In this document: piece by piece, positions 1,517-49,651 of the stretch
How positions within the stretch are numbered: position 1 is the first letter of the stretch
Layout of the letters: the number at the start of each line of letters is the position of its first letter
NCBI GenBank assembly: GCA_977020255.1
Contig: CDROCS010000122.1
Span: 496,001 to 560,000 of the forward strand
Length of the DNA: 64,000 nt
From: Obrimoposthia wandeli
Taxonomy: Eukaryota
Reading direction: 5' to 3'
Program-made: the position numbers and the translations under genes
Notes under the pieces: generated by a model
What the model saw: the letters and a program-made list of their open reading frames with translations, nothing else
What the model was told of the DNA's origin: nothing
Databases searched by the model: none

Positions 1517-2524
1517 ATGAACAAGAAACTGATTGCTTTAGCAGTAGCAGCAGCATCTATCTCTTCTGTAGCAACAGCAGCAGAAGTTTACTCAGACGAA
1601 ACATCTAGCCTAGCAGTTGGCGGTCGTTTTGAAGCACGTGCAGTACTAGCTGATGTAGAAAAAGACAACAGCAACAAAACAAGCAGCGAAGTGTCTGATA
1701 ACAGCCGCGTACGTATTAACGTTGCTGGTAAAACAGACATCACTGACGATTTCTACGGTGTTGGTTTCTTTGAAAAAGAATTCAGCAGCGCTGACAGCGA
1801 CAACGACGAAACTCGTTACGCATACGCAGGTGTTGGCAGCCAATACGGTCAGCTAGTATACGGTAAAGCTGACGGTTCTCTAGGCATGATCACTGACTTT
1901 ACAGATATCATGGCATACCACGGTAACGAAGCGGGTAACAAACTTGCTGCTGCTGACCGTACAGACAACAACCTTAGCTACGTGGGTTCTTTCGACATCA
2001 ATGGCGACAACCTAACAGTTAAAGCGAACTACGTATTTGGCGGTAGCGAAGACACTGAAGGTTACTCTGCTGCAGCAATGTATGCTATGGACATGGGTCT
2101 AGGCTTTGGTGCTGGCTACGGCGAGCAAGACGGTCAAGATGGCCAAGACAAAACTGGTAAGCAAGCATTCGGTGCTATCTCTTACACAATCAGCGATTTC
2201 TACTTCTCTGGTCTTTACCAAGATGGACGTAACACTGTAGTTAACGGTAACCTAATCGATGATTCTACTGGTTACGAATTCGCAGCAGCTTACACATACG
2301 GTAAAGCAGTATTCATTACTACTTACAACTTCTTAGAAGATTCTAACGCGTCAGGCGATGCATCTGACCTTAAAGATTCTATCGCTATTGACGGTACTTA
2401 CTACTTCAACAAGAACTTCCGTACTTACGCATCTTACAAGTTCAACCTACTTGATGCTAATGGCTCAACTACTAAAGCACAAGCTTCAGATGAGTTCGTT
2501 CTTGGTGCACGTTACGACTTCTAA
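1517..2524 (+). CDS. ompL: major outer membrane porin, OmpU/OmpL family
   Basis: Signal peptide, beta-barrel pattern, C-terminal ARYDF; greA-porin-dacB synteny as for Vibrio ompU; resembles P. profundum OmpL as I recall it. Confidence 0.88.
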   Translation: MNKKLIALAVAAASISSVATAAEVYSDETSSLAVGGRFEARAVLADVEKDNSNKTSSEVSDNSRVRINVAGKTDITDDFYGVGFFEKEFSSADSDNDETRYAYAGVGSQYGQLVYGKADGSLGMITDFTDIMAYHGNEAGNKLAAADRTDNNLSYVGSFDINGDNLTVKANYVFGGSEDTEGYSAAAMYAMDMGLGFGAGYGEQDGQDGQDKTGKQAFGAISYTISDFYFSGLYQDGRNTVVNGNLIDDSTGYEFAAAYTYGKAVFITTYNFLEDSNASGDASDLKDSIAIDGTYYFNKNFRTYASYKFNLLDANGSTTKAQASDEFVLGARYDF

Positions 2525-2562
2525 TCCCACTTGGATTAGTTAAGCTTAACGCTGATACTTTT

Positions 2563-2594
2563 AAAAACGCAGATCGTAAGATCTGCGTTTTTTT
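2563..2594 (+). terminator. porin gene terminator
   Basis: AAAAACGCAGATC-gtaa-GATCTGCGTTTTTTT. Confidence 0.9.
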
Positions 2595-2599
2595 ATGTT

Positions 2600-2646
2600 T
2601 ATACCCAAGCTACCTCAATATGCTCATTTACTGTAACTTGGGGATA
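2600..2646. mobile_element. 47-bp collapsed copy of the ERIC-like MITE at 55443
   Basis: TATACCCAAGCTACCTCAATATGCTC matches the left end of the 55443 element at 25/26 nt; ends GTAACTTGGGGATA, resembling its right end GTAGCTTGGGTATA. Confidence 0.75.
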
Positions 2647-2692
2647 TCTACTATATGATTAGCACTATTATTTCAGATAATTGTGCATACTC

Positions 2693-4096
2693 ATGTTTAA
2701 AAAAATCTTATCACTGTCACTGCTTGTTATGAGTCTGCCTTCACTGGCTGCGTTCAATCCCCAAGCTGCCATCAATAAACTGCCTAACGGACACGATTTA
2801 GCGTTAATGATCGCTGATCCTGCAACCAATAAGGTACTTTATTCCCAGCGTACAGAACAATTACAAGCCCCAGCCAGTACACAAAAAATGATCACCGCAC
2901 TTGCGGCTAAACTCTATCTTGATGACAACTACCGTTTTAATACTGATCTGGAGGCGAATGCGAATGATGTGATTATTCGCTTTAATGGCGACCCAACACT
3001 ATCCCGTACTGAGCTAACATCACTGCTAAGAACACTCAAAAAGAATGGCCTTTCAACGATCAAAGGTAACTTATACCTAAATGGTAATGCTTTCTCTGGC
3101 TATGAGCGCGCAGCTGGCTGGCCATGGGATATTCTAGGCGTTTGCTATAGTGCGCCATCAAGCAGCATTACACTTGAACACAACTGTGTACAGGGCGCTT
3201 TATACAGTAATAAAGCTATCGGTCAGCAAACACGTATTAATATTCCCAGTCACCAGCCGATTAAAGCGACAACCAATGCGCTTATCGTGACAAAAGAGCA
3301 GCAAAAACAACAACACTGCGAATTAGAATTAGTTGCAGATTCTAGTAACAATTATCAACTTAGTGGGTGTTTACCACAAAGCCAGAAGCCACTGCCGTTA
3401 AACTTTGCCGTGCAAAATACCGAAGCTTATACCGCAGCAGTGATTCAGCAGGAATTAAAACGTTCGGGGATCCAGCTAAAAGGCACAATTCTTCGTAATG
3501 ACAATATAAAAGGTAAACGCATTGCACGCCATCAATCGGCACCGCTGTCGGAACTGATCGATATTATGCTGAAGAAATCAGACAACTTAATCGCTGATAA
3601 CTTAACCAAAACATTAGGGCGTGAATACTTTAAACAAGCAGGCACATTCAACAATGGCGTGGCAGCAATCAAAGCCATTTTACAGGAACAAGCCAATATC
3701 GACTTAACCGATACTGTTATGGTCGATGGTTCAGGCTTATCACGTAATAACCGCATAAAAGCAAGCTCACTGATGCAAGTGATCACTTACCTCTATAACA
3801 ACCCTTCATTGGGTTTACTGAAAAATATGCCAGTATCAGGAGAAAGTGGCACGTTACTTTACCGACAAAGTCTTCGCCAAGCGCCACTGAAGGGCAATAT
3901 AGTTGCAAAAAGTGGGTCTTTATATGGCAGTTACAATCTCGCAGGCATGATTAATACTCAATCAGGTAAAACATTGTTGTTTGTCCAATTGGTAAATAAC
4001 TATTTTCCACCCGATAAAACGAATGATAAGCCCACGACTCCCCCTATCACTGAATTTGAAAAAGCCTTATACCTCGGTATTTATAACGAATATTAA
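2693..4096 (+). CDS. dacB: D-alanyl-D-alanine carboxypeptidase/endopeptidase PBP4
   Basis: PASTQK (SxxK), KSDN (SxN), AKSGSL (KTG-like) motifs; DGSGLSR; start could be TTG at 2681. Confidence 0.93.
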   Translation: MFKKILSLSLLVMSLPSLAAFNPQAAINKLPNGHDLALMIADPATNKVLYSQRTEQLQAPASTQKMITALAAKLYLDDNYRFNTDLEANANDVIIRFNGDPTLSRTELTSLLRTLKKNGLSTIKGNLYLNGNAFSGYERAAGWPWDILGVCYSAPSSSITLEHNCVQGALYSNKAIGQQTRINIPSHQPIKATTNALIVTKEQQKQQHCELELVADSSNNYQLSGCLPQSQKPLPLNFAVQNTEAYTAAVIQQELKRSGIQLKGTILRNDNIKGKRIARHQSAPLSELIDIMLKKSDNLIADNLTKTLGREYFKQAGTFNNGVAAIKAILQEQANIDLTDTVMVDGSGLSRNNRIKASSLMQVITYLYNNPSLGLLKNMPVSGESGTLLYRQSLRQAPLKGNIVAKSGSLYGSYNLAGMINTQSGKTLLFVQLVNNYFPPDKTNDKPTTPPITEFEKALYLGIYNEY

Positions 4097-4143
4097 GCAA
4101 CCCGAGATAACCTATCGCTTCAGTAACCTACGACTAAAACAAC

Positions 4144-4176
4144 AAAGCCCTAACGTATCGAATACGTTAGGGCTTT
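4144..4176. terminator. bidirectional terminator dacB/mgtE
   Basis: AAAGCCCTAACGTAT-cga-ATACGTTAGGGCTTT perfect inverted repeat. Confidence 0.85.
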
Positions 4177-4198
4177 CGTTATGATTTATAGCTTAAGA

Positions 4199-5047
4199 CT
4201 ACGATAATCCAAGCATCCAATTGACGGTGGTAAAATAAATCATCATACCGGTGATATCGACCACAGAGGCCAATACAGGGCTAACCAATACCGCCGGATC
4301 TAACCGGCATGCCCGTGCCACCATTGGCAGCACACCACCGACACTCGTTGATAATACAACCTGAAGTGATATAGCCATGCCAATTGCCATTGCTATATCT
4401 TCTAGGTTCATACCTGCTGGCAGCGAGGTGCTATCGCTGAACATCATCACACGCCCCATAATCACCGCGGCTAATACGCTAGCCATGATGATTGATACGC
4501 GAAATTCTTTCCACAATACGAGTAGCCAGTCTTTACACCGTATCTCTTCCATCGCGAGCGCCCTTACCACCAAGGTTGCTGCTTGCGATCCGGTATTACC
4601 ACCAGCAGCCGCAATAACGGGCATATAGATGGCGAGTAATACTAATTGGCTTAATGTATCTTCGTAATGAGAGATGATTAAACCGGAAACAATACCAAGT
4701 AAAGCTAACCCTACAATCCAACCAATACGCTCACGTACATGGCTCATTACACTGTTTTTCAGATAATGACCTGCGGGCTCTGCTTCAGAGCACAGTAAAC
4801 CAAGCCCACTCGCTAAGTGACGCATACGTACTTCTTCACCCAGCTCATCCAATCGATCAAGCAGGTTTTGGACATGACGTAGCGGGCACTCATGGAGCAC
4901 AGCAATAGCTTCTGTTATTGGCATCACAACCAATAATTTTGCTTGCTCATCAAAGGTATATTTTAAAAATGCATTTCGTGCAGCCAGAATATCATTCTGA
5001 CCATAGTTTTCCGTTACAGCATCTGCTGCATAGTTCATTACCGCCAT
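4199..5047 (-). CDS. mgtE: short MgtE-family magnesium transporter (membrane domain, no CBS pair)
   Basis: YMPVIAAAGGNTGSQAATLVVRAL and DPAVLVSPVLASVVDITG motifs; GGAG SD before ATG at 5047; only about 85 aa of N-terminal cytosolic sequence. Confidence 0.88.
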   Translation of the reverse strand: MAVMNYAADAVTENYGQNDILAARNAFLKYTFDEQAKLLVVMPITEAIAVLHECPLRHVQNLLDRLDELGEEVRMRHLASGLGLLCSEAEPAGHYLKNSVMSHVRERIGWIVGLALLGIVSGLIISHYEDTLSQLVLLAIYMPVIAAAGGNTGSQAATLVVRALAMEEIRCKDWLLVLWKEFRVSIIMASVLAAVIMGRVMMFSDSTSLPAGMNLEDIAMAIGMAISLQVVLSTSVGGVLPMVARACRLDPAVLVSPVLASVVDITGMMIYFTTVNWMLGLS

Positions 5048-5325
5048 GGCGAATCTCCCGATTGGCATAGTTACAGTAACGACCATCAAAATTTTGCCAC
5101 GATACAAGGTAAACGTGCTTTTTACTCTTTGCTGTAACACTAAATAATAGCGCTACAAACAACAGCAAAATGCCTGTCATTTACTACTTATTGACATAAT
5201 TCAACATTGAGAACTAAGGAAGAAAATCGAGGAAGTATTGTCAGATTGGGTATAAAGCAAATATACAAATAAGGACAAGCTATTCCGAACCCTGGCAGGA
5301 TCGGAAACATAGGAGACCGATACCA

Positions 5326-5379
5326 TTAAAGGGTTTGATTTTCCACCTTCATACTCGGAGGATGGTCGGTATCGTTCAT
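5326..5379 (-). CDS. putative Pro-Pro leader peptide of mgtE, MNDTDHPPSMKVENQTL (17 aa)
   Basis: GGAG SD 6 nt before ATG, CCT-CCG codons, TAA stop; lies downstream of a candidate promoter in the mgtE leader; too short for the ORF track. Confidence 0.65.
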   Translation of the reverse strand: MNDTDHPPSMKVENQTL

Positions 5380-5419
5380 TGAAATCTCCAAAAATTTGCC
5401 GCTTGTTGCGACGTCGGTA

Positions 5420-5447
5420 ATTGTACGCAATTCAATTCTGAGTTCAA
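5420..5447 (-). promoter_or_regulatory. candidate sigma-70 promoter for leader peptide + mgtE
   Basis: TTGAAC-N16-TACAAT. Confidence 0.5.
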
Positions 5448-5519
5448 GATCTATATGAGTTAAAAGTGATACAAATTGTGATGGTTACCACGTCTACCTG
5501 CCTAATTCGTGAATATAAA

Positions 5520-5542
5520 AAACCCACCAAAAGGTGGGTTTC
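5520..5542 (-). terminator. carB terminator
   Basis: AAACCCACC-tttt-GGTGGGTTTTT on minus strand. Confidence 0.75.
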
Positions 5543-5576
5543 TAAAATATAAGCAATATACCGTTAAGATTGCATC

Positions 5577-8500
5577 TTAATAGTGATGATTATCCTTAAT
5601 ACGAGCGTGAAGCTCTTGCAAAGATGTAACATGGCCACGGTCATCGGCAGTGTGAGCCATACACGTTGCAAATGCAGCATTTAGCGTAGTGGTGTAATTT
5701 ACCTTTTCAGCCAATGCGCTACGACGAAGTACTTTAGAGTCTTCAATCGCTTGGCGACCTTCTGCCGTATTCACAATGTAGGAGTATTCATTATTCTTGA
5801 TGCGGTCAAGAATATGAGGACGCCCTTCGTGTACCTTGTTCACTAGACGTGGGTTAATCCCCGCTTCACCTAGAATCACAGCGGTACCGTGTGTGGCATC
5901 TAGCTGGTAACCAAGCTTCACAAGCTTAGAGGCTAAATCGACAACACGTTGCTTGTCATTATTACGTACTGATAATAGTGCGCGACCACCATCTTCATAC
6001 TCTTTACCACAACCAAGCTCTGCTTTAGCAAATGCTTCTGCAAATGTGTCACCAAAGCCCATCACCTCACCTGTTGAGCGCATTTCAGGGCCTAACAGTG
6101 GGTCAACACCTGGGAATTTGTTAAATGGCAGAACCACTTCTTTCACAGAGTAGTAAGGAGGGATAATCTCTTTAGTGAAGCCTTGAGATTCAAGAGATTG
6201 ACCAGCCATTACACGTGCTGCAATTTTCGCTAGCGGTGCACCTGTTGCTTTCGAAACAAATGGGACAGTACGCGCAGCACGAGGGTTAACTTCAATTAAG
6301 TAAACTTCGTTATCTTTCACTGCGAACTGGGTGTTCATCAAACCACGAACACCTAGCTCAAATGCTAGCTTTTTCACTTGCTCACGCATCACATCTTGGA
6401 TTTCTTTGCTTAGCGTGTAAGCAGGCAATGAACATGCTGAATCACCCGAGTGAACACCCGCTTGTTCAATGTGTTCCATGATGCCGCCGATAACAACCTG
6501 TTCACCATCACAAATGGCATCAACATCGACTTCAACTGCATCATCAAGGAAACGGTCAAGCAATACCGGTGATTCGTTAGAAACACTTACCGCTTCATTA
6601 AAGTAACGGCGAAGGTCTTGCTCGTCATAGACGATTTCCATCGCACGACCACCCAATACATACGATGGACGCACAACTAATGGGAAACCAATAATACGTG
6701 ATTTCTCAATCGCCAATTCCATTGTTGTAACAGTGGCATTCTCTGGCTGTAATAGACCTAAACGGTCAACCGCTTGCTGGAAGCGTTCACGGTCTTCTGC
6801 ACGGTCGATAGCATCAGGGCTAGTACCTATAATCGGCACACCAGCGGCTTCAAGTTCACGAGCCAGTTTAAGTGGTGTTTGACCACCGTATTGAACAATA
6901 ACGCCTTTTGGCTTTTCAACACGCACAATAGCCAGCACATCTTCTAGTGTTACTGGTTCAAAGTACAATCGATCTGATGTGTCGAAATCTGTTGAAACCG
7001 TTTCAGGGTTACAGTTAACCATGATTGTTTCATAACCATCTTCACGTAATGCTAATGATGCATGTACACAACAGTAATCAAATTCAATACCTTGACCGAT
7101 ACGGTTAGGACCACCGCCCAGAATCATGATCTTATCATTATCTGTTGGCTGTGCTTCACACTCTTCATCATATGTAGAGTACATGTAAGCCGTATCAGAA
7201 GAGAATTCAGCCGCACAAGTATCAACGCGCTTATAAACGGGATGAATGTCATGCTGGTAACGTAATTTACGAATTTCACTCTGTGCAACACCGAGCAATT
7301 TCGCTAAACGTTCATCAGAGAAACCTTTACGCTTTAGCTTACGTAGTTCAACGGCATTTAGACCCGCAAAACCGTTATCTTTAACTTTTTGCTCATCTTT
7401 AACGATGTCTTCTATTTGCACCAAGAACCAACGGTCAACATTCGTTAAGTTGTGTACACCATCAACCGACATACCTGAACGGAATGCATCGGCAATGTAC
7501 CAAATACGCTCTGCGCCTGGCTCTTTCAGTTCATGACGAATCTTGCTCATGGCATTAGGTTCGTCTAGATCAACCATTTCATCAAAGCCTGTTGCGCCAA
7601 CTTCTAAGCCACGCAATGCTTTCTGTAATGATTCCTGCTGATTACGACCAATCGCCATCACTTCACCCACAGATTTCATCTGTGTTGTTAGACGATCATT
7701 AGCACCAGCAAACTTTTCAAAGTTAAAGCGAGGGATCTTCGTTACAACATAATCGATAGTCGGTTCAAATGATGCTGGTGTCGCACCACCCGTGATGTCG
7801 TTCATTAATTCATCAAGGGTGTAACCAATCGCCAGTTTCGCTGCAATTTTTGCAATTGGGAAACCTGTCGCTTTAGAAGCAAGCGCAGATGAGCGCGATA
7901 CGCGTGGGTTCATTTCGATGATAACCATACGGCCATCTTTCGGGTTGATACCAAACTGGACGTTTGAACCGCCCGTTTCAACACCGATTTCACGCAATAC
8001 TGCTAGCGATGCATTACGCATCAACTGATATTCTTTATCTGTTAGTGTTTGTGCTGGTGCAACCGTGATTGAGTCACCGGTGTGAACACCCATCGCATCA
8101 AAGTTTTCAATCGCACATACGATGATACAGTTGTCGTTTTTGTCACGAACAACTTCCATCTCGTATTCTTTCCAACCAATTAACGATTCATCGATAAGCA
8201 ATTCGTTAGTCGGTGAAAGATCTAAACCACGAGAACAGATTTCTTCAAATTCTTCTTTGTTATAAGCGATACCACCGCCCGTACCACCCATCGTAAACGA
8301 TGGACGAATGATACAAGGGAAACCCACCATATCGAGAACTTTGTAAGCTTCTTCCATGGTTTTCGCTGTATCGGCATTAGGACATTCTAAACCTATAGAT
8401 TTCATTGCCTTGTCGAAACGTGAACGGTTTTCAGCTTTATCAATTGCATCAGCTGTTGCACCAATCATTTCAACATTGAATTCTTTTAGTACACCGCGCG

Positions 8501-47172: not shown

Positions 47173-48432
47173 GTGAAAGACTTTTCCGAGTTAGAGTTAG
47201 ATAGCGCACTTTTAAACGCGATTGAAGAAATCGGCTACACCCGCCCGACCGAAGTTCAGGCACAGGCTATCCCTCACGCCCTGGACGGTAGAGACGTATT
47301 GGCTTCCGCTCCTACAGGTACCGGAAAAACAGCTGCATTTCTTTTACCGATGATCCAGCACTTACTTGATTTCCCTCGTAAGAAGCCAGGGCCAGCGCGT
47401 GTATTGATTTTAACCCCAACGCGTGAGCTTGCGATTCAAATTGCTGACCATGCCCGTGCATTAGCTAAAAATACTCACCTGAAGATTTTCACGATCACTG
47501 GCGGTATTTCATACGATGATCACGCTGAACTTCTAGGTAAAACACAAGATATCGTTGTGGCAACACCGGGACGTTTAATGGAGTACGTTGAAAGTGAGCG
47601 TTTCGATTGCCGAGCAATTGAATGCTTAATTTTAGATGAAGCTGACCGTATGCTAGATATGGGCTTCACTAAAATTGTTGATCGTATTAACCACGAATGT
47701 CGCTGGCGTCGTCAAAGCCTTCTATTCTCTGCAACCTTAGAAGGTAAAGGCGTTCGTGAGTTTTCAGAAACAATTTTGAAAGAACCTATAGAAATAAACT
47801 CTGCACCTTCGCGCCGCGAACGTAAGAAGATTCATCAGATTTACTTACGTTGTGACGATATGGATCACAAATTAGCATTGCTTGAGCAAATCCTGAAACA
47901 TCAGGCAGAACGCAGCATTGTCTTTGTGAAAACCCGTGACCGTCTGGCGATGTTACGTGATCAGCTTGCATCGATGAACGTGAAATGTAGCTGGATTCAA
48001 GGTGAAATGGCTCAGCAATCTCGTAACAATGCGATTTCTCGTTTCCGTGATGGTGATGTCAACATTCTGATTGCAACCGATGTTGCGGCTCGTGGTATCG
48101 ATTTACCCGACATTAGCCACGTAATCAACTTTGATATGCCACGTACTGCTGACGTATATTTACACCGTATCGGTCGTACTGCACGTGCAGGTAAAAAAGG
48201 TATTGCGGTTTCACTGGTTGAAGCACACGATCAAGCGATGATCGAACGTGTTAGCCGCTACATGGAAGAAGAAGTGCCAGAACGTTTCATCAACGGTTTA
48301 CGCCCAGCAAGTAAAAAAGCCAAAACCGTTAAAAAGAAAAAAGTAAAAATCGATAAGAAACTGAAAGTTGCTAAGCAAAAGAAAGCAGCTAAAAAGCATA
48401 AGAAAGCATCAGAAAGCAAACCTGAAGCTTAA
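47173..48432 (+). CDS. srmB: DEAD-box RNA helicase SrmB
   Basis: APTGTGKT, PTRELA, DEAD, SAT, HRIGRTAR, Lys-rich tail. Confidence 0.96.
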   Translation: MKDFSELELDSALLNAIEEIGYTRPTEVQAQAIPHALDGRDVLASAPTGTGKTAAFLLPMIQHLLDFPRKKPGPARVLILTPTRELAIQIADHARALAKNTHLKIFTITGGISYDDHAELLGKTQDIVVATPGRLMEYVESERFDCRAIECLILDEADRMLDMGFTKIVDRINHECRWRRQSLLFSATLEGKGVREFSETILKEPIEINSAPSRRERKKIHQIYLRCDDMDHKLALLEQILKHQAERSIVFVKTRDRLAMLRDQLASMNVKCSWIQGEMAQQSRNNAISRFRDGDVNILIATDVAARGIDLPDISHVINFDMPRTADVYLHRIGRTARAGKKGIAVSLVEAHDQAMIERVSRYMEEEVPERFINGLRPASKKAKTVKKKKVKIDKKLKVAKQKKAAKKHKKASESKPEA

Positions 48433-48459
48433 TCACTTATCGGTTTATCTCTACAACAG

Positions 48460-48790
48460 AGAAAAGTAGGTGAGGCGAGATACGACGGATCGTATACGGC
48501 TCCTGTAGTCTTCTATTTATCTTACAGGGAGCAAGATCACTATCGCATATAAGCCAATTTCCTTGAACCATATTCGGCATGGCATAGAAACATTTTTCCA
48601 TGAGTCCATCGTCATAAACAATGGCGGCTTATAACCACTGTTTCAATCTCCGATGCAGTTTCATCGGCTTCTTCCACAACTTTAATTGTCGTTCTAGCCT
48701 TATCTCCCGCTAATTGGGTTAACATATTCGTATTGTTACTTCACTTGCACCATCTAAGTCTTTCCACGTTTCGTCGGGTGAACTTTGGCT
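48460..48790 (-). pseudogene. degenerate 3' remnant of a group II intron (maturase domain X + domains V/VI)
   Basis: Frameshifted blocks QLKLWKKPMKLHRRLKQ (48688-48638), GYKPPLFMTMDSWKN, YAMPN, WFKEIGLY; then GGAGCCGTATACGA (domain V start, AGC triad) and CCTCACCTACT (domain VI-like end). Confidence 0.75.
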
Positions 48791-49546
48791 TTAAACCAAC
48801 TCTTTACTGGTCGATTCTGCTGGCACAAAGTAGTAACCCGCCACATCAAATTGCTTCAGTTCATCAACCGACTTAATGCGGTTATCAATAATGTAACGTG
48901 CCATCATGCCACGGGCCTTTTTAGCGTAAAAACTGATCACTTTATAATTACCGTTCTTACAATCTTTAAAAACCGGCGTGATGAGCTGTGCATCTAATGA
49001 TTTTGGCTTCACCGATTTGAAATATTCATTTGACGCCAAGTTGATCAAGATATTATCACCCTGCTCGGAAAGCGCAGCATTGAGCTTTTCAGTGATCACA
49101 CTCCCCCAGAACTGATACAAGTTAGCACCACGTGGATTAACAAGCTTTGTACCCATCTCTAAGCGATAAGGTTGCATTAAATCAAGCGGGCGTAGTAAAC
49201 CATATAAACCAGACAACATACGAAGGTGCTGCTGAGTATAGGCAAAGTCTTCGTCCGTCATGGTTTCTGCGGCTAGGCCGGTATACACATCGCCTTTGAA
49301 GGCCAAAATAGCCTGACGCGCATTCTCTGTCGTAAATTCTGGCTGCCACTCAGCAAATCGGGCCGCATTTAAACCCGCAATTTTATCGCTCACCTTCATC
49401 AGGCTAGCAATATCCATTGGTGTTAACTTGCGGCACACTTCCATCAACTCAGAAGAGTGATCCGTTAGCTCTGGTAACGTATAAGTTTGCGTTGCTAAGG
49501 GAGAGTCATAATCAAGTGTTTTTGCTGGTGAAACCACAATTAACAT
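48791..49546 (-). CDS. yaaA: peroxide stress protein YaaA (UPF0246), C-terminus apparently shortened
   Basis: [39 protein letters not shown]; ends KELV* with no FKR-type tail. Confidence 0.93.
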
Positions 49547-49593: not shown

Positions 49594-49623
49594 AAAAAAA
49601 ACCACGCGATTGTCGCGTGGCTT
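49594..49623 (-). terminator. AgcS gene terminator
   Basis: AGCCACGCGA-caa-TCGCGTGGTT then T-run. Confidence 0.85.
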
Positions 49624-49651
49624 AATAGATTTATCTAATAGGTAATACCTA

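What the first reader, a model, noticed from the sequence alone, without database searches (positions are those of the whole stretch)
48460..48790. Fossil group II intron hidden between srmB and yaaA
Seen: minus-strand frameshifted blocks TRRN..., MLTQLAG-IR-, QLKLWKKPMKLHRRLKQ, GYKPPLFMTMDSWKN, YAMPN and WFKEIGLY. They are followed by GGAGCCGTATACGA (domain V 5' arm with AGC triad, 3' arm deleted) and CCTCACCTACT (domain VI-like end). Known: this block order matches the maturase/domain X C-terminus of bacterial group II intron RTs, and class C introns insert after intrinsic terminators. Inference: an intron inserted at the srmB/yaaA terminator and later lost its 5' part. No terminator remains between these convergent genes.
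Basis: partly seen in the sequence, partly recalled or inferred. Interest (0 to 1): 0.7.

Follow-up and report, generated by a model that had tools for sequence, protein, structure and literature searches.

The report
Garbled class C intron remnant
The spacer between srmB and yaaA holds the tail of a terminator-seeking (class C) group II intron, but it is not an ancient fossil: its odd deletion-only damage recurs around other mobile elements in this assembly and is most likely a sequence-consensus error over a recent insertion.

Summary
Observation confirmed. Window 48466-48795 (minus strand) derives from the 3' end of a group II intron. It matches about ten copies elsewhere in the assembly (79-80% identity counting gaps, E 1e-68). 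An intact intron RT matches it with tblastn E 1.6e-14.

The family is class C (IIC). Its 421-aa RT has no endonuclease domain, and its best solved relatives are all IIC RTs. Eight of nine independent 5' ends sit right after a hairpin plus T-run.

The four closest Photobacterium genomes (P. profundum SS9, P. frigidiphilum and two others) and four public runs have an empty site. There the spacer is about 131 nt, with a perfect 15-bp bidirectional terminator. The intron's 3' end abuts the T-tract after it, in yaaA sense.

The "fossil" reading does not hold:
- Against the family consensus the remnant has 3 substitutions, 31 deletions without microhomology and no insertions.
- An exact 19-nt piece of the native yaaA tail is embedded inside it.
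- A run with 100%-identical flanks carries the native tail.
- The same deletion-only damage hits an unrelated IS family and unique flanking DNA in this assembly, but not intron fragments in the finished SS9 genome.

Most likely this is a recent or polymorphic insertion garbled by the assembly consensus. The biology is ordinary; interest is low.

The parts
47173..48432 (+). srmB (ATP-dependent RNA helicase SrmB), intact, stop at 48430-48432
   Evidence: NCBIfam NF008394, E 2e-206. The exact protein is in the public collection, and its cluster members are named P. frigidiphilum / P. profundum SrmB.
48433..48465 (-). Native spacer kept on the srmB side: this is the 3' exon of the intron insertion (TTTCTCTGTTGTAGAGATAAACCGATAAGTGA on the yaaA-sense strand). 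The insertion point lies within 48461-48466.
   Evidence: Collinear with the empty sites of four sister genomes up to 48464 (92-96% identity over 48100-48464). The X1 contig has 0 differences up to 48464.
48466..48477 (-). Domain VI 3' strand remnant CGCCTCACCTAC. It lacks one C and the last 3-4 nt (TCGA) of the intron end CCTCACCCTACTCGAT.
   Evidence: Alignment A1. All eight aligned full-length copies end ...CCTCACCCTACTCGAT, and the RF00029 model ends there.
48481..48503 (-). Domain V 5' arm with the AGC triad (GGAGCCGTATACGA) plus the loop and upper-stem remnant (TCCGTCGTA). The DV 3' arm and DVI 5' strand (about 30 nt) are absent.
   Evidence: There is no RF00029 hit in the window, against 46.4 bits in intact copies.
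48517..48729 (-). Intron piece B: the end of the RT/maturase ORF (domain X C-terminus, ...QLKLWKKPMKLHRRLKQ..GYKPP..WFKEIGLY..ILLPVR*), broken into three frames by deletions.
   Evidence: tblastn E 1.6e-14; DNA alignments.
48730..48748 (-). Embedded native sequence: GCAAGTGAAGTAACAATAC, i.e. the natural last codons, stop codon and 7 following nt of yaaA, misplaced inside the intron-derived stretch.
   Evidence: Exact 19/19 match at the syntenic position in the empty-site contig of run X4. The binned depth values of X1-X3 are consistent with the same piece. A 14-mer of it is in the SS9 and G022 native sites. It is absent from the intron consensus.
48749..48795 (-). Intron piece A: the start of RT domain X (TTTAAAGCCAAAGT..TCACCCGACGAAAC..GTGGAAAG..ACTTAG..ATGGTG = FKAKV..TRRN), with 4 small deletions. 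Its first bases supply yaaA's premature TAA stop.
   Evidence: Junction analysis.
48791..49546 (-). yaaA (peroxide stress protein YaaA), 251 aa as assembled. It ends ...KELV* instead of ...ELVFKREEQ(VK)*.
   Evidence: NCBIfam NF002541 matches profile positions 1-251 of 258. All 18 relatives examined are 256-259 aa. The native tail is seen in runs X1-X4. The exact 251-aa protein is not in the 15-billion-protein collection.

Best explanation
Shown: window 48466-48795 (minus strand) comes from the 3' end of a bacterial class C (IIC) group II intron. The same family has full-length, roughly 2.1-kb copies elsewhere in this assembly and in Photobacterium profundum SS9. It lies at the kind of site IIC introns target: its 3' end abuts the T-tract that follows the strong bidirectional terminator shared by the convergent yaaA and srmB genes, in yaaA orientation. 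The sister genomes show that site empty, so the insertion is specific to this lineage. Inferred: it is not an old, slowly decayed fossil. Its differences from active copies are almost purely deletions (31 events, 3 substitutions), the deletions lack microhomology, and a native 19-mer is interleaved collinearly with the intron pieces. The same deletion-only damage surrounds other mobile-element insertions in this invertebrate long-read assembly, including unique flanking DNA. The fine structure therefore most likely reflects a faulty consensus. That covers the frameshifts, the lost DV arm and the embedded native piece, and possibly also the 5' truncation, the missing terminator and the shortened yaaA. 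The likely cause is a site where the intron insertion is recent and perhaps present in only part of the bacterial population. Either way the element as written is dead: it has no 5' ribozyme domains, no intact RT and no complete domain V.
For: Intron origin: blastn E 3e-68 to about ten copies; tblastn E 1.6e-14; the copies carry RVT_1+GIIM, TIGR04416 at 413 bits, RF02001 (64.6 bits) and RF00029 (46.4 bits). Class C: the best solved-structure hits are all IIC RTs (7uim 2.8e-80, GsI-IIC 6ar1 7.9e-79, 5hhj/5hhl 2e-67), against LtrA 1e-41 and 6me0 1e-39; the RT is 421 aa with no endonuclease domain; 8 of 9 independent 5' ends follow a hairpin (dG -16.6 to -20.2) plus T-run. This matches the published IIC rule that splice sites lie 3-11 nt downstream of a terminator stem-loop (PMC1702495). 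Empty site: four sister genomes have about 131 nt with a 15-pair terminator on both strands. Not a fossil / probable artefact: 3 mismatches, 31 deletions (137 nt), 0 insertions versus the consensus; in 20 kb of neighbouring DNA, substitutions outnumber indels about 40:1; mean microhomology is 0.26 against 0.65 for random placement; native 19-mer at 48730-48748; X1 contigs are 0/671 different in the flanks yet carry the native yaaA tail at depth 10.6 of 16, and no contig of four runs covers 48474-48711; X1's word share of 0.47 equals my own estimate for flanks only, 0.46. The same syndrome appears in other intron copies (C5499: 11 mismatches / 76 deletions; C1688b: 10 / 52), in an unrelated IS family (C2105: 1 mismatch / 7 deletions in 472 nt; C3840: 12 / 29), and in unique DNA beside the C5499 copy, where a stretch identical in three other species carries 10-50-nt deletions. 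SS9 fragments of this intron family have 7-8 mismatches and 0 gaps.
Against: I could not see the raw reads behind this assembly. X1 may be a different though near-identical strain, and the tool warns that a hole in contig coverage proves nothing. A simple mixture of a native allele and a full-length-intron allele does not by itself explain why the spacer and terminator, which both alleles share, are missing. So a truly truncated allele may exist. Unique DNA immediately flanking the remnant is clean (0 differences to X1), so the damage is sharply local. I could not identify the assembler or polisher responsible.
Confidence: 0.7

Rival explanations
1. First reader's model. An intron inserted behind the srmB/yaaA terminator long ago, a later deletion removed its 5' part together with the terminator, and the rest decayed slowly as a neutral pseudo-element (a true fossil).
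For: The sequence is intron-derived and at a IIC target. Fragments of group II introns are common in bacteria (PMC3522654). SS9 has genuine 5'-truncated 3' fragments of this family.
Against: Only 3 substitutions versus the consensus, fewer than most full-length copies. The four nearest species lack it, and contigs with identical flanks have the native tail. Deletions outnumber substitutions about 10:1, the reverse of the local norm. A native 19-mer sits inside it. Real old fragments in SS9 show substitutions and no gaps.
Confidence: 0.07
2. A real but very recent one-step messy integration. Abortive retrotransposition of the endonuclease-less IIC intron gave a 5'-truncated cDNA. This was joined to upstream DNA by illegitimate or template-switch repair, which deleted the terminator, the spacer and the last codons of yaaA. 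The cell really has a truncated YaaA and no terminator.
For: The 3' junction lies where retromobility would put it. The 5' junction falls at a TTTAAA shared by yaaA (F-K) and the RT (F-K), a plausible microhomology. 5'-truncated fragments exist in SS9. A truncated allele would explain why the shared spacer and terminator are missing.
Against: It does not explain 31 internal deletions without microhomology, nor the same syndrome in IS copies and in unique DNA at another locus. The collinear interleaving of the native 19-mer would need several extra switches. No run shows the allele.
Confidence: 0.18
3. A genuine, unknown local hyper-deletion process that riddles mobile-element insertions and their immediate flanks with small blunt deletions in this Photobacterium.
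For: The syndrome is confined to zones at mobile elements (introns, IS) and their flanks, while ordinary DNA is clean.
Against: I know of no such mechanism. It would have destroyed a small ORF that is 100% conserved in three other species. It is absent from the finished SS9 genome and unsupported by any run. Long-read consensus error is the simpler account.
Confidence: 0.04
4. Chance resemblance: an ordinary intergenic spacer with no intron ancestry.
For: None beyond the short length of the individual peptide blocks.
Against: E 3e-68 at DNA level and 1.6e-14 at protein level. The spacer is not shared by any of the 67 Photobacterium genomes searched.
Confidence: 0.01

Closest known systems
Bacterial class C (IIC) group II introns, e.g. 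B.h.I1 of Bacillus halodurans, GsI-IIC, and the Eubacterium rectale / Roseburia intestinalis IIC introns
   Same: The parent family has a compact RT (421 aa) with RVT_1 and maturase X domains and no endonuclease domain. Its closest solved structures are the IIC RTs. It has canonical DV/DVI (RF00029). It inserts a few nt after Rho-independent terminator hairpins in the sense orientation (PMC1702495, PMC4748821).
   Different: The window copy holds only about 330 nt, corresponding to the last approx. 470 nt of the intron. It has no DI-DIV, the RT tail is broken into three frames, domain V lacks its 3' arm, and the target terminator itself is missing.
Full-length and fragmentary copies of the same family in Photobacterium profundum SS9 (e.g. 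G040:C2:936583-938687; 3' fragments at C2:953558-953715 and C2:371243-371333)
   Same: Same intron family: 94% identity for the full-length copy. SS9 also has 5'-truncated 3'-terminal fragments.
   Different: The SS9 fragments differ from the consensus by substitutions only (7-8 mismatches, 0 gaps). The window remnant differs by deletions only (3 mismatches, 31 deletions).
Group II intron fragments catalogued in Enterobacteriales (So.gl.I1, Di.ze.I1 and others; PMC3522654)
   Same: Inactivated partial copies of class C introns located behind terminators, often without a full-length partner at the same site.
   Different: The paper treats those as ordinary inactivated copies. The present one carries an embedded piece of host sequence and a deletion pattern that matches an assembly-wide artefact.

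Membership tests
Group II intron (any class) | Intron-encoded RT/maturase with RT (RVT_1) and maturase X (GIIM) domains | tested here: met
   Met as ancestry only. Full-length relatives have RVT_1 (1e-39), GIIM (7e-18) and TIGR04416 at 413 bits. The window keeps only the last approx. 90 residues, in three frames (tblastn E 1.6e-14). The separate pieces give no Pfam hit.
Group II intron (any class) | Catalytic domain V hairpin and domain VI with bulged branch-point A (Rfam RF00029) | tested here: not met
   No RF00029 hit in the window at E<=10. Only the DV 5' arm and DVI 3' strand remain. Intact copies score 46.4 bits.
Group II intron (any class) | 5' end and domains I-IV of the ribozyme | tested here: not met
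   Homology to the 2107-nt consensus covers only positions about 1636-2102. RF02001 (D1-D4) is found in the intact copy but not in the window.
Bacterial class C (IIC) introns | RT of the IIC lineage, without a DNA endonuclease domain | tested here: met
   The parent-family RT is 421 aa. The top PDB hits are all IIC RTs (7uim, 6ar1, 5hhj, 5hhl; E 1e-80 to 1e-67), against IIA LtrA at 1e-41 and 6me0 at 1e-39. That these entries are IIC (and that 6me0 is a IIB maturase) rests on my own knowledge of them plus the name 'GsI-IIC RT' in the table.
Bacterial class C (IIC) introns | Insertion a few nt downstream of a Rho-independent terminator stem-loop, sense orientation, with a short T-rich IBS1 | tested here: met
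   8 of 9 independent 5' ends follow a hairpin (dG -16.6 to -20.2) plus T-run. At the window's own site the sister genomes have a 15-pair terminator, and the intron 3' end lies in the T-tract after it (TTTCTTG|TTTCTCTG, +/-3 nt). The published range is 3-11 nt (PMC1702495).
Bacterial class C (IIC) introns | Ability to splice and retromobilise | not testable with these tools
   Predicted dead from the missing parts.
Ancient neutral pseudo-element ('fossil') | Substitutions accumulated at least at the local neutral rate, and presence shared by related lineages | tested here: not met
   3 substitutions in about 330 nt versus the consensus. Absent from the four nearest genomes and from four runs, including one with identical flanks.

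The most novel reading that the evidence does not exclude
The deletion-only scarring is real. In this Photobacterium, insertions of retroelements and IS elements, together with a few hundred bases of their flanks, would be riddled with small blunt deletions by an unknown host process. That would amount to a deletion-based way of inactivating mobile DNA. Here it would have removed a shared terminator and clipped yaaA.
Probability: 0.04. Interest if true: 0.75.

Novelty: already known. Interest (0 to 1): 0.15.

Why it matters
If taken at face value, the site would be a neat case of a class C intron destroying the terminator it targeted and truncating a neighbouring gene. The evidence says the intron ancestry and the target site are real but ordinary, and that the decay, and probably the gene damage, should not be trusted. 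The practical value is a warning. In this invertebrate assembly the bacterial contigs carry zones of deletion-only consensus damage at mobile elements. I saw these in intron copies, in IS copies and in adjacent unique DNA. Other 'fossil' intron or IS findings from this genome (several are listed in the scan's notes) should be checked for the same signature before they are interpreted.

Tried and rejected
- Rfam on the window at E<=10 gave no intron family. This is explained by the missing DV 3' arm.
- Pfam on the three separate ORF pieces gave nothing; they are too short.
- The microhomology test for slippage or MMEJ-type deletions came out below random, so natural slippage is rejected.
- I looked for further native k-mers interleaved in the remnant. 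Four collinear 7-14-mers were found, but the 7-mers are not above chance, so only the 19-mer is used.
- A scan of metagenome contigs with the native 19-mer returned six unrelated chance hits.
Exact look-up shows it is absent from the protein collection.
- I tried to decide whether the contigs carrying intact copies belong to the same bacterium. A flank of C2331 is 97-100% identical to P. frigidiphilum G015, and the assembly holds only one srmB-yaaA locus of this clade. So they probably belong to the same bacterium, but this is not proven; the C3840 flank gave no match.
- The exact 5' boundary (GTGTTTG or GTTTG) and the exact insertion point (+/-3 nt) remain ambiguous.

Full report
**What is at the site.** srmB (47173-48432, + strand) and yaaA (48791-49546, - strand) converge on a 358-nt spacer. 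Rfam finds no group II intron model here, even at E<=10.

**Intron ancestry.** A DNA search of the window's own assembly with 48433-48795 hit about ten places on other contigs at 79-80% identity counting gaps (E down to 3e-68). Those places also carry the maturase domain GIIM and RF00029 domain V/VI at 46.4 bits.
- Aligning eight full-length copies defines an element of about 2.1 kb (consensus 2107 nt) that ends ...CCTCACCCTACTCGAT.
- One copy (L117:2037-3302, minus) encodes an intact 421-aa protein with RVT_1 and GIIM and scores 413 bits on TIGR04416, group II intron RT/maturase.
- That protein finds only this stretch of the 64-kb window by tblastn (E 1.6e-14; QLKLWKKPMKLHRRLKQ is 17/17).
- GGAGCCGTATACGA (48503-48490) is the DV 5' arm. 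CGCCTCACCTAC (48477-48466) is the DVI 3' strand. About 30 nt between them is missing, which explains the Rfam blank.

**Class.** The RT's best matches among solved structures are all IIC enzymes: 7uim at 2.8e-80, GsI-IIC RT 6ar1 at 7.9e-79, and 5hhj/5hhl at about 2e-67. LtrA (IIA) scores 1e-41 and 6me0 scores 1e-39. That these entries are IIC is my own knowledge, apart from the name 'GsI-IIC RT' in the table. The protein has no endonuclease domain.

Eight of nine independent 5' ends, including the one in P. profundum SS9, sit directly after a strong hairpin (dG -16.6 to -20.2 kcal/mol) plus a T-run. This is the published hallmark of IIC introns: they lie downstream of terminator motifs, use an IBS1 of only 3-4 nt, and have splice sites 3-11 nt past the stem-loop (PMC1702495; also PMC4748821, PMC3522654).

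**Host and empty site.** YaaA is 84% identical to Photobacterium proteins. The exact SrmB sequence clusters with P. frigidiphilum and P. profundum SrmB. Notes from the scan indicate that the 1.35-Gb assembly is an invertebrate genome with bacterial by-catch, and it holds several other yaaA orthologues at 66-72% identity.

All four have about 131 nt where the window has 325.

Their spacer reads: yaaA ...GTCTTTAAACGTGAAGAGCAAxTGAAGTAA, then about 75 nt, then AAGAAAGGCAGAGAT-TTT-ATCTCTGCCTTTCTT, then G|TTTCTCTGTTGTAGAGATAAACCGATAAGTGA, then the srmB stop. The hairpin is a perfect 15-pair terminator detected on both strands (dG -22.9).

In the window the intron's last bases abut TTTCTCTG... directly. 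So the insertion point is in the T-tract behind the terminator, in yaaA sense, within +/-3 nt.

**yaaA is clipped.** All 18 relatives examined end ...ELVFKREEQ(N)* at 256-259 aa. The window's YaaA ends ...KELV* at 251 aa and covers profile positions 1-251 of 258. The premature TAA lies in TTTAAAGCC, where yaaA's own TTTAAA (F-K) meets the RT's TTTAAA (F-K).

**Why it is not a fossil.**
1. Against the family consensus the remnant has 3 mismatches, 31 separate deletions (1-21 nt, 137 nt in all) and no insertion. In 20 kb of surrounding DNA compared with SS9 and P. frigidiphilum, substitutions outnumber indels about 40:1.
2. The deletions have less microhomology than random placement (0.26 vs 0.65), so they are not slippage or MMEJ products.
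3. Laying the contigs of four public runs on 48100-49100 gives four results:
   - No contig covers 48474-48711.
   - Run X1 has 0 differences in 365 + 306 nt of flank, yet carries the native yaaA tail (GAGTTGGTTTTTAAACGTGAAGAGCAAGTGAAGTAACAATAC, depth 10.6 against a flank depth of 16).
   - X4 has an empty-site contig and X3 a joint that skips the stretch; X2 and X3 carry the native tail.
   - All four hold an exact copy of window 48730-48748.
4. That 19-mer is the natural end of yaaA (last codons, stop and 7 nt). It is absent from the intron consensus. In the window it sits between two intron pieces, collinear with both.
5. X1's share of the query's 31-mers (0.47) equals what the flanks alone would give by my own count (0.46).

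**The same damage elsewhere in this assembly.**
- Other intron copies: C5499 has 11 mismatches and 76 deletions (477 nt). C1688b has 10 mismatches and 52 deletions. C2331a/b have none, and the SS9 copy has 115 mismatches with 1 deletion and 1 insertion.
- An unrelated DDE-transposase IS family shows it too. C2105 has 1 mismatch and 7 deletions in 472 nt. C3840 has 12 mismatches and 29 deletions. A fragment on the window's own contig at C122:279767 is also affected.
- Beside the C5499 copy the damage runs about 230 nt into unique DNA. A stretch that is identical in SS9, G015 and G022 carries deletions of 10, 11, 50, 13 and 11 nt in this assembly.
- By contrast, genuine fragments of this intron family in the finished SS9 genome (158 nt and 91 nt of the 3' end) differ by 7-8 substitutions and no gap.

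**Reading.** The intron ancestry, the class and the target site are shown. The 'decay' is best explained as a consensus error of the long-read assembly. The likely setting is a site where a IIC intron insertion is recent and possibly heterogeneous in the bacterial population.

I cannot tell whether the true allele is a full-length insertion or a cleanly truncated one. A truncated allele would better explain why the spacer and terminator, which any insertion allele should share with the native one, are missing. The claims 'no terminator remains' and 'YaaA is shortened' hold for the sequence as written, but they should not be taken as biology until reads confirm them.

**Limits.**
- The source reads were not available.
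- The metagenome scan gave only chance hits.
- The tool states that a hole in contig coverage proves nothing.
- The scan's notes list other 'group II intron fossil' findings on other pieces of this genome. I did not examine them, and they may show the same signature.

Noticed in passing
L117 (G000:C2331:25500-33500), introns at locus 1949-4053 and 4054-6134, minus strand: Two full-length copies of the intron lie head to tail. The downstream copy starts right after the domain VI hairpin and the ...CTCGAT end of the upstream copy (dG -24.3), as if DVI served as the stem-loop target. Its start reads AT|GTTTGC instead of GT|GTTTGC. The upstream copy lacks its first approx. 28 nt, and a 41-nt intron 5' end preceded by a terminator lies about 1.25 kb further upstream.
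   Followed up: partly
L123 (G000:C5499:76500-82500), locus 3823-4100: Unique DNA next to a garbled intron copy carries 10-50-nt deletions and almost no substitutions. In SS9, G015 and G022 this DNA is nearly identical and appears to encode a small protein of roughly 100 aa. This looks like consensus damage reaching beyond the repeat.
   Followed up: partly
L142, L143, L145, L147 (G000:C1209:105078-106406; C3840:222646-223936; C2105:271141-271818; C122:279767-279998): Copies of a DDE-transposase IS (reference copy C122:230999-233199, 444-aa ORF) show the same pattern of few substitutions and many deletions.
   Followed up: partly
L139 (G000:C3840:6000-11500), locus 1723-2598 and 2601-3475: An approx. 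876-nt direct tandem duplication lies inside an IS4/IS5-type transposase region (95% identity, 29 mismatches, 7 gaps). The second unit is full of stop codons.
   Followed up: no
P. profundum SS9: G040:C1:4072758-4073605, C1:2140805-2141650, C2:881444-882287, C2:929089-931170: A second, related intron lineage (77% identity to positions 1-504, 90-95% to the last 82 nt). It includes about 850-nt ORF-less derivatives made of the 5' ribozyme part plus the DV/DVI end.
   Followed up: no
window 49594-49624: A strong GC-rich hairpin with A/T runs on both sides (AAAAAAAACCACGCGATTGTCGCGTGGCTT) lies upstream of yaaA, between yaaA and the next gene on the minus strand. It gives only weak, sub-threshold Rfam hits (isrJ, Trp_leader, Hrs1) and is probably just a bidirectional terminator.
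   Followed up: no
window 48392: Run X4's contig has a 10-nt insertion (AAAGCATAAG) in the lysine-rich tail of srmB relative to the window. This is a repeat-length polymorphism in the SrmB C-terminal tail.
   Followed up: no
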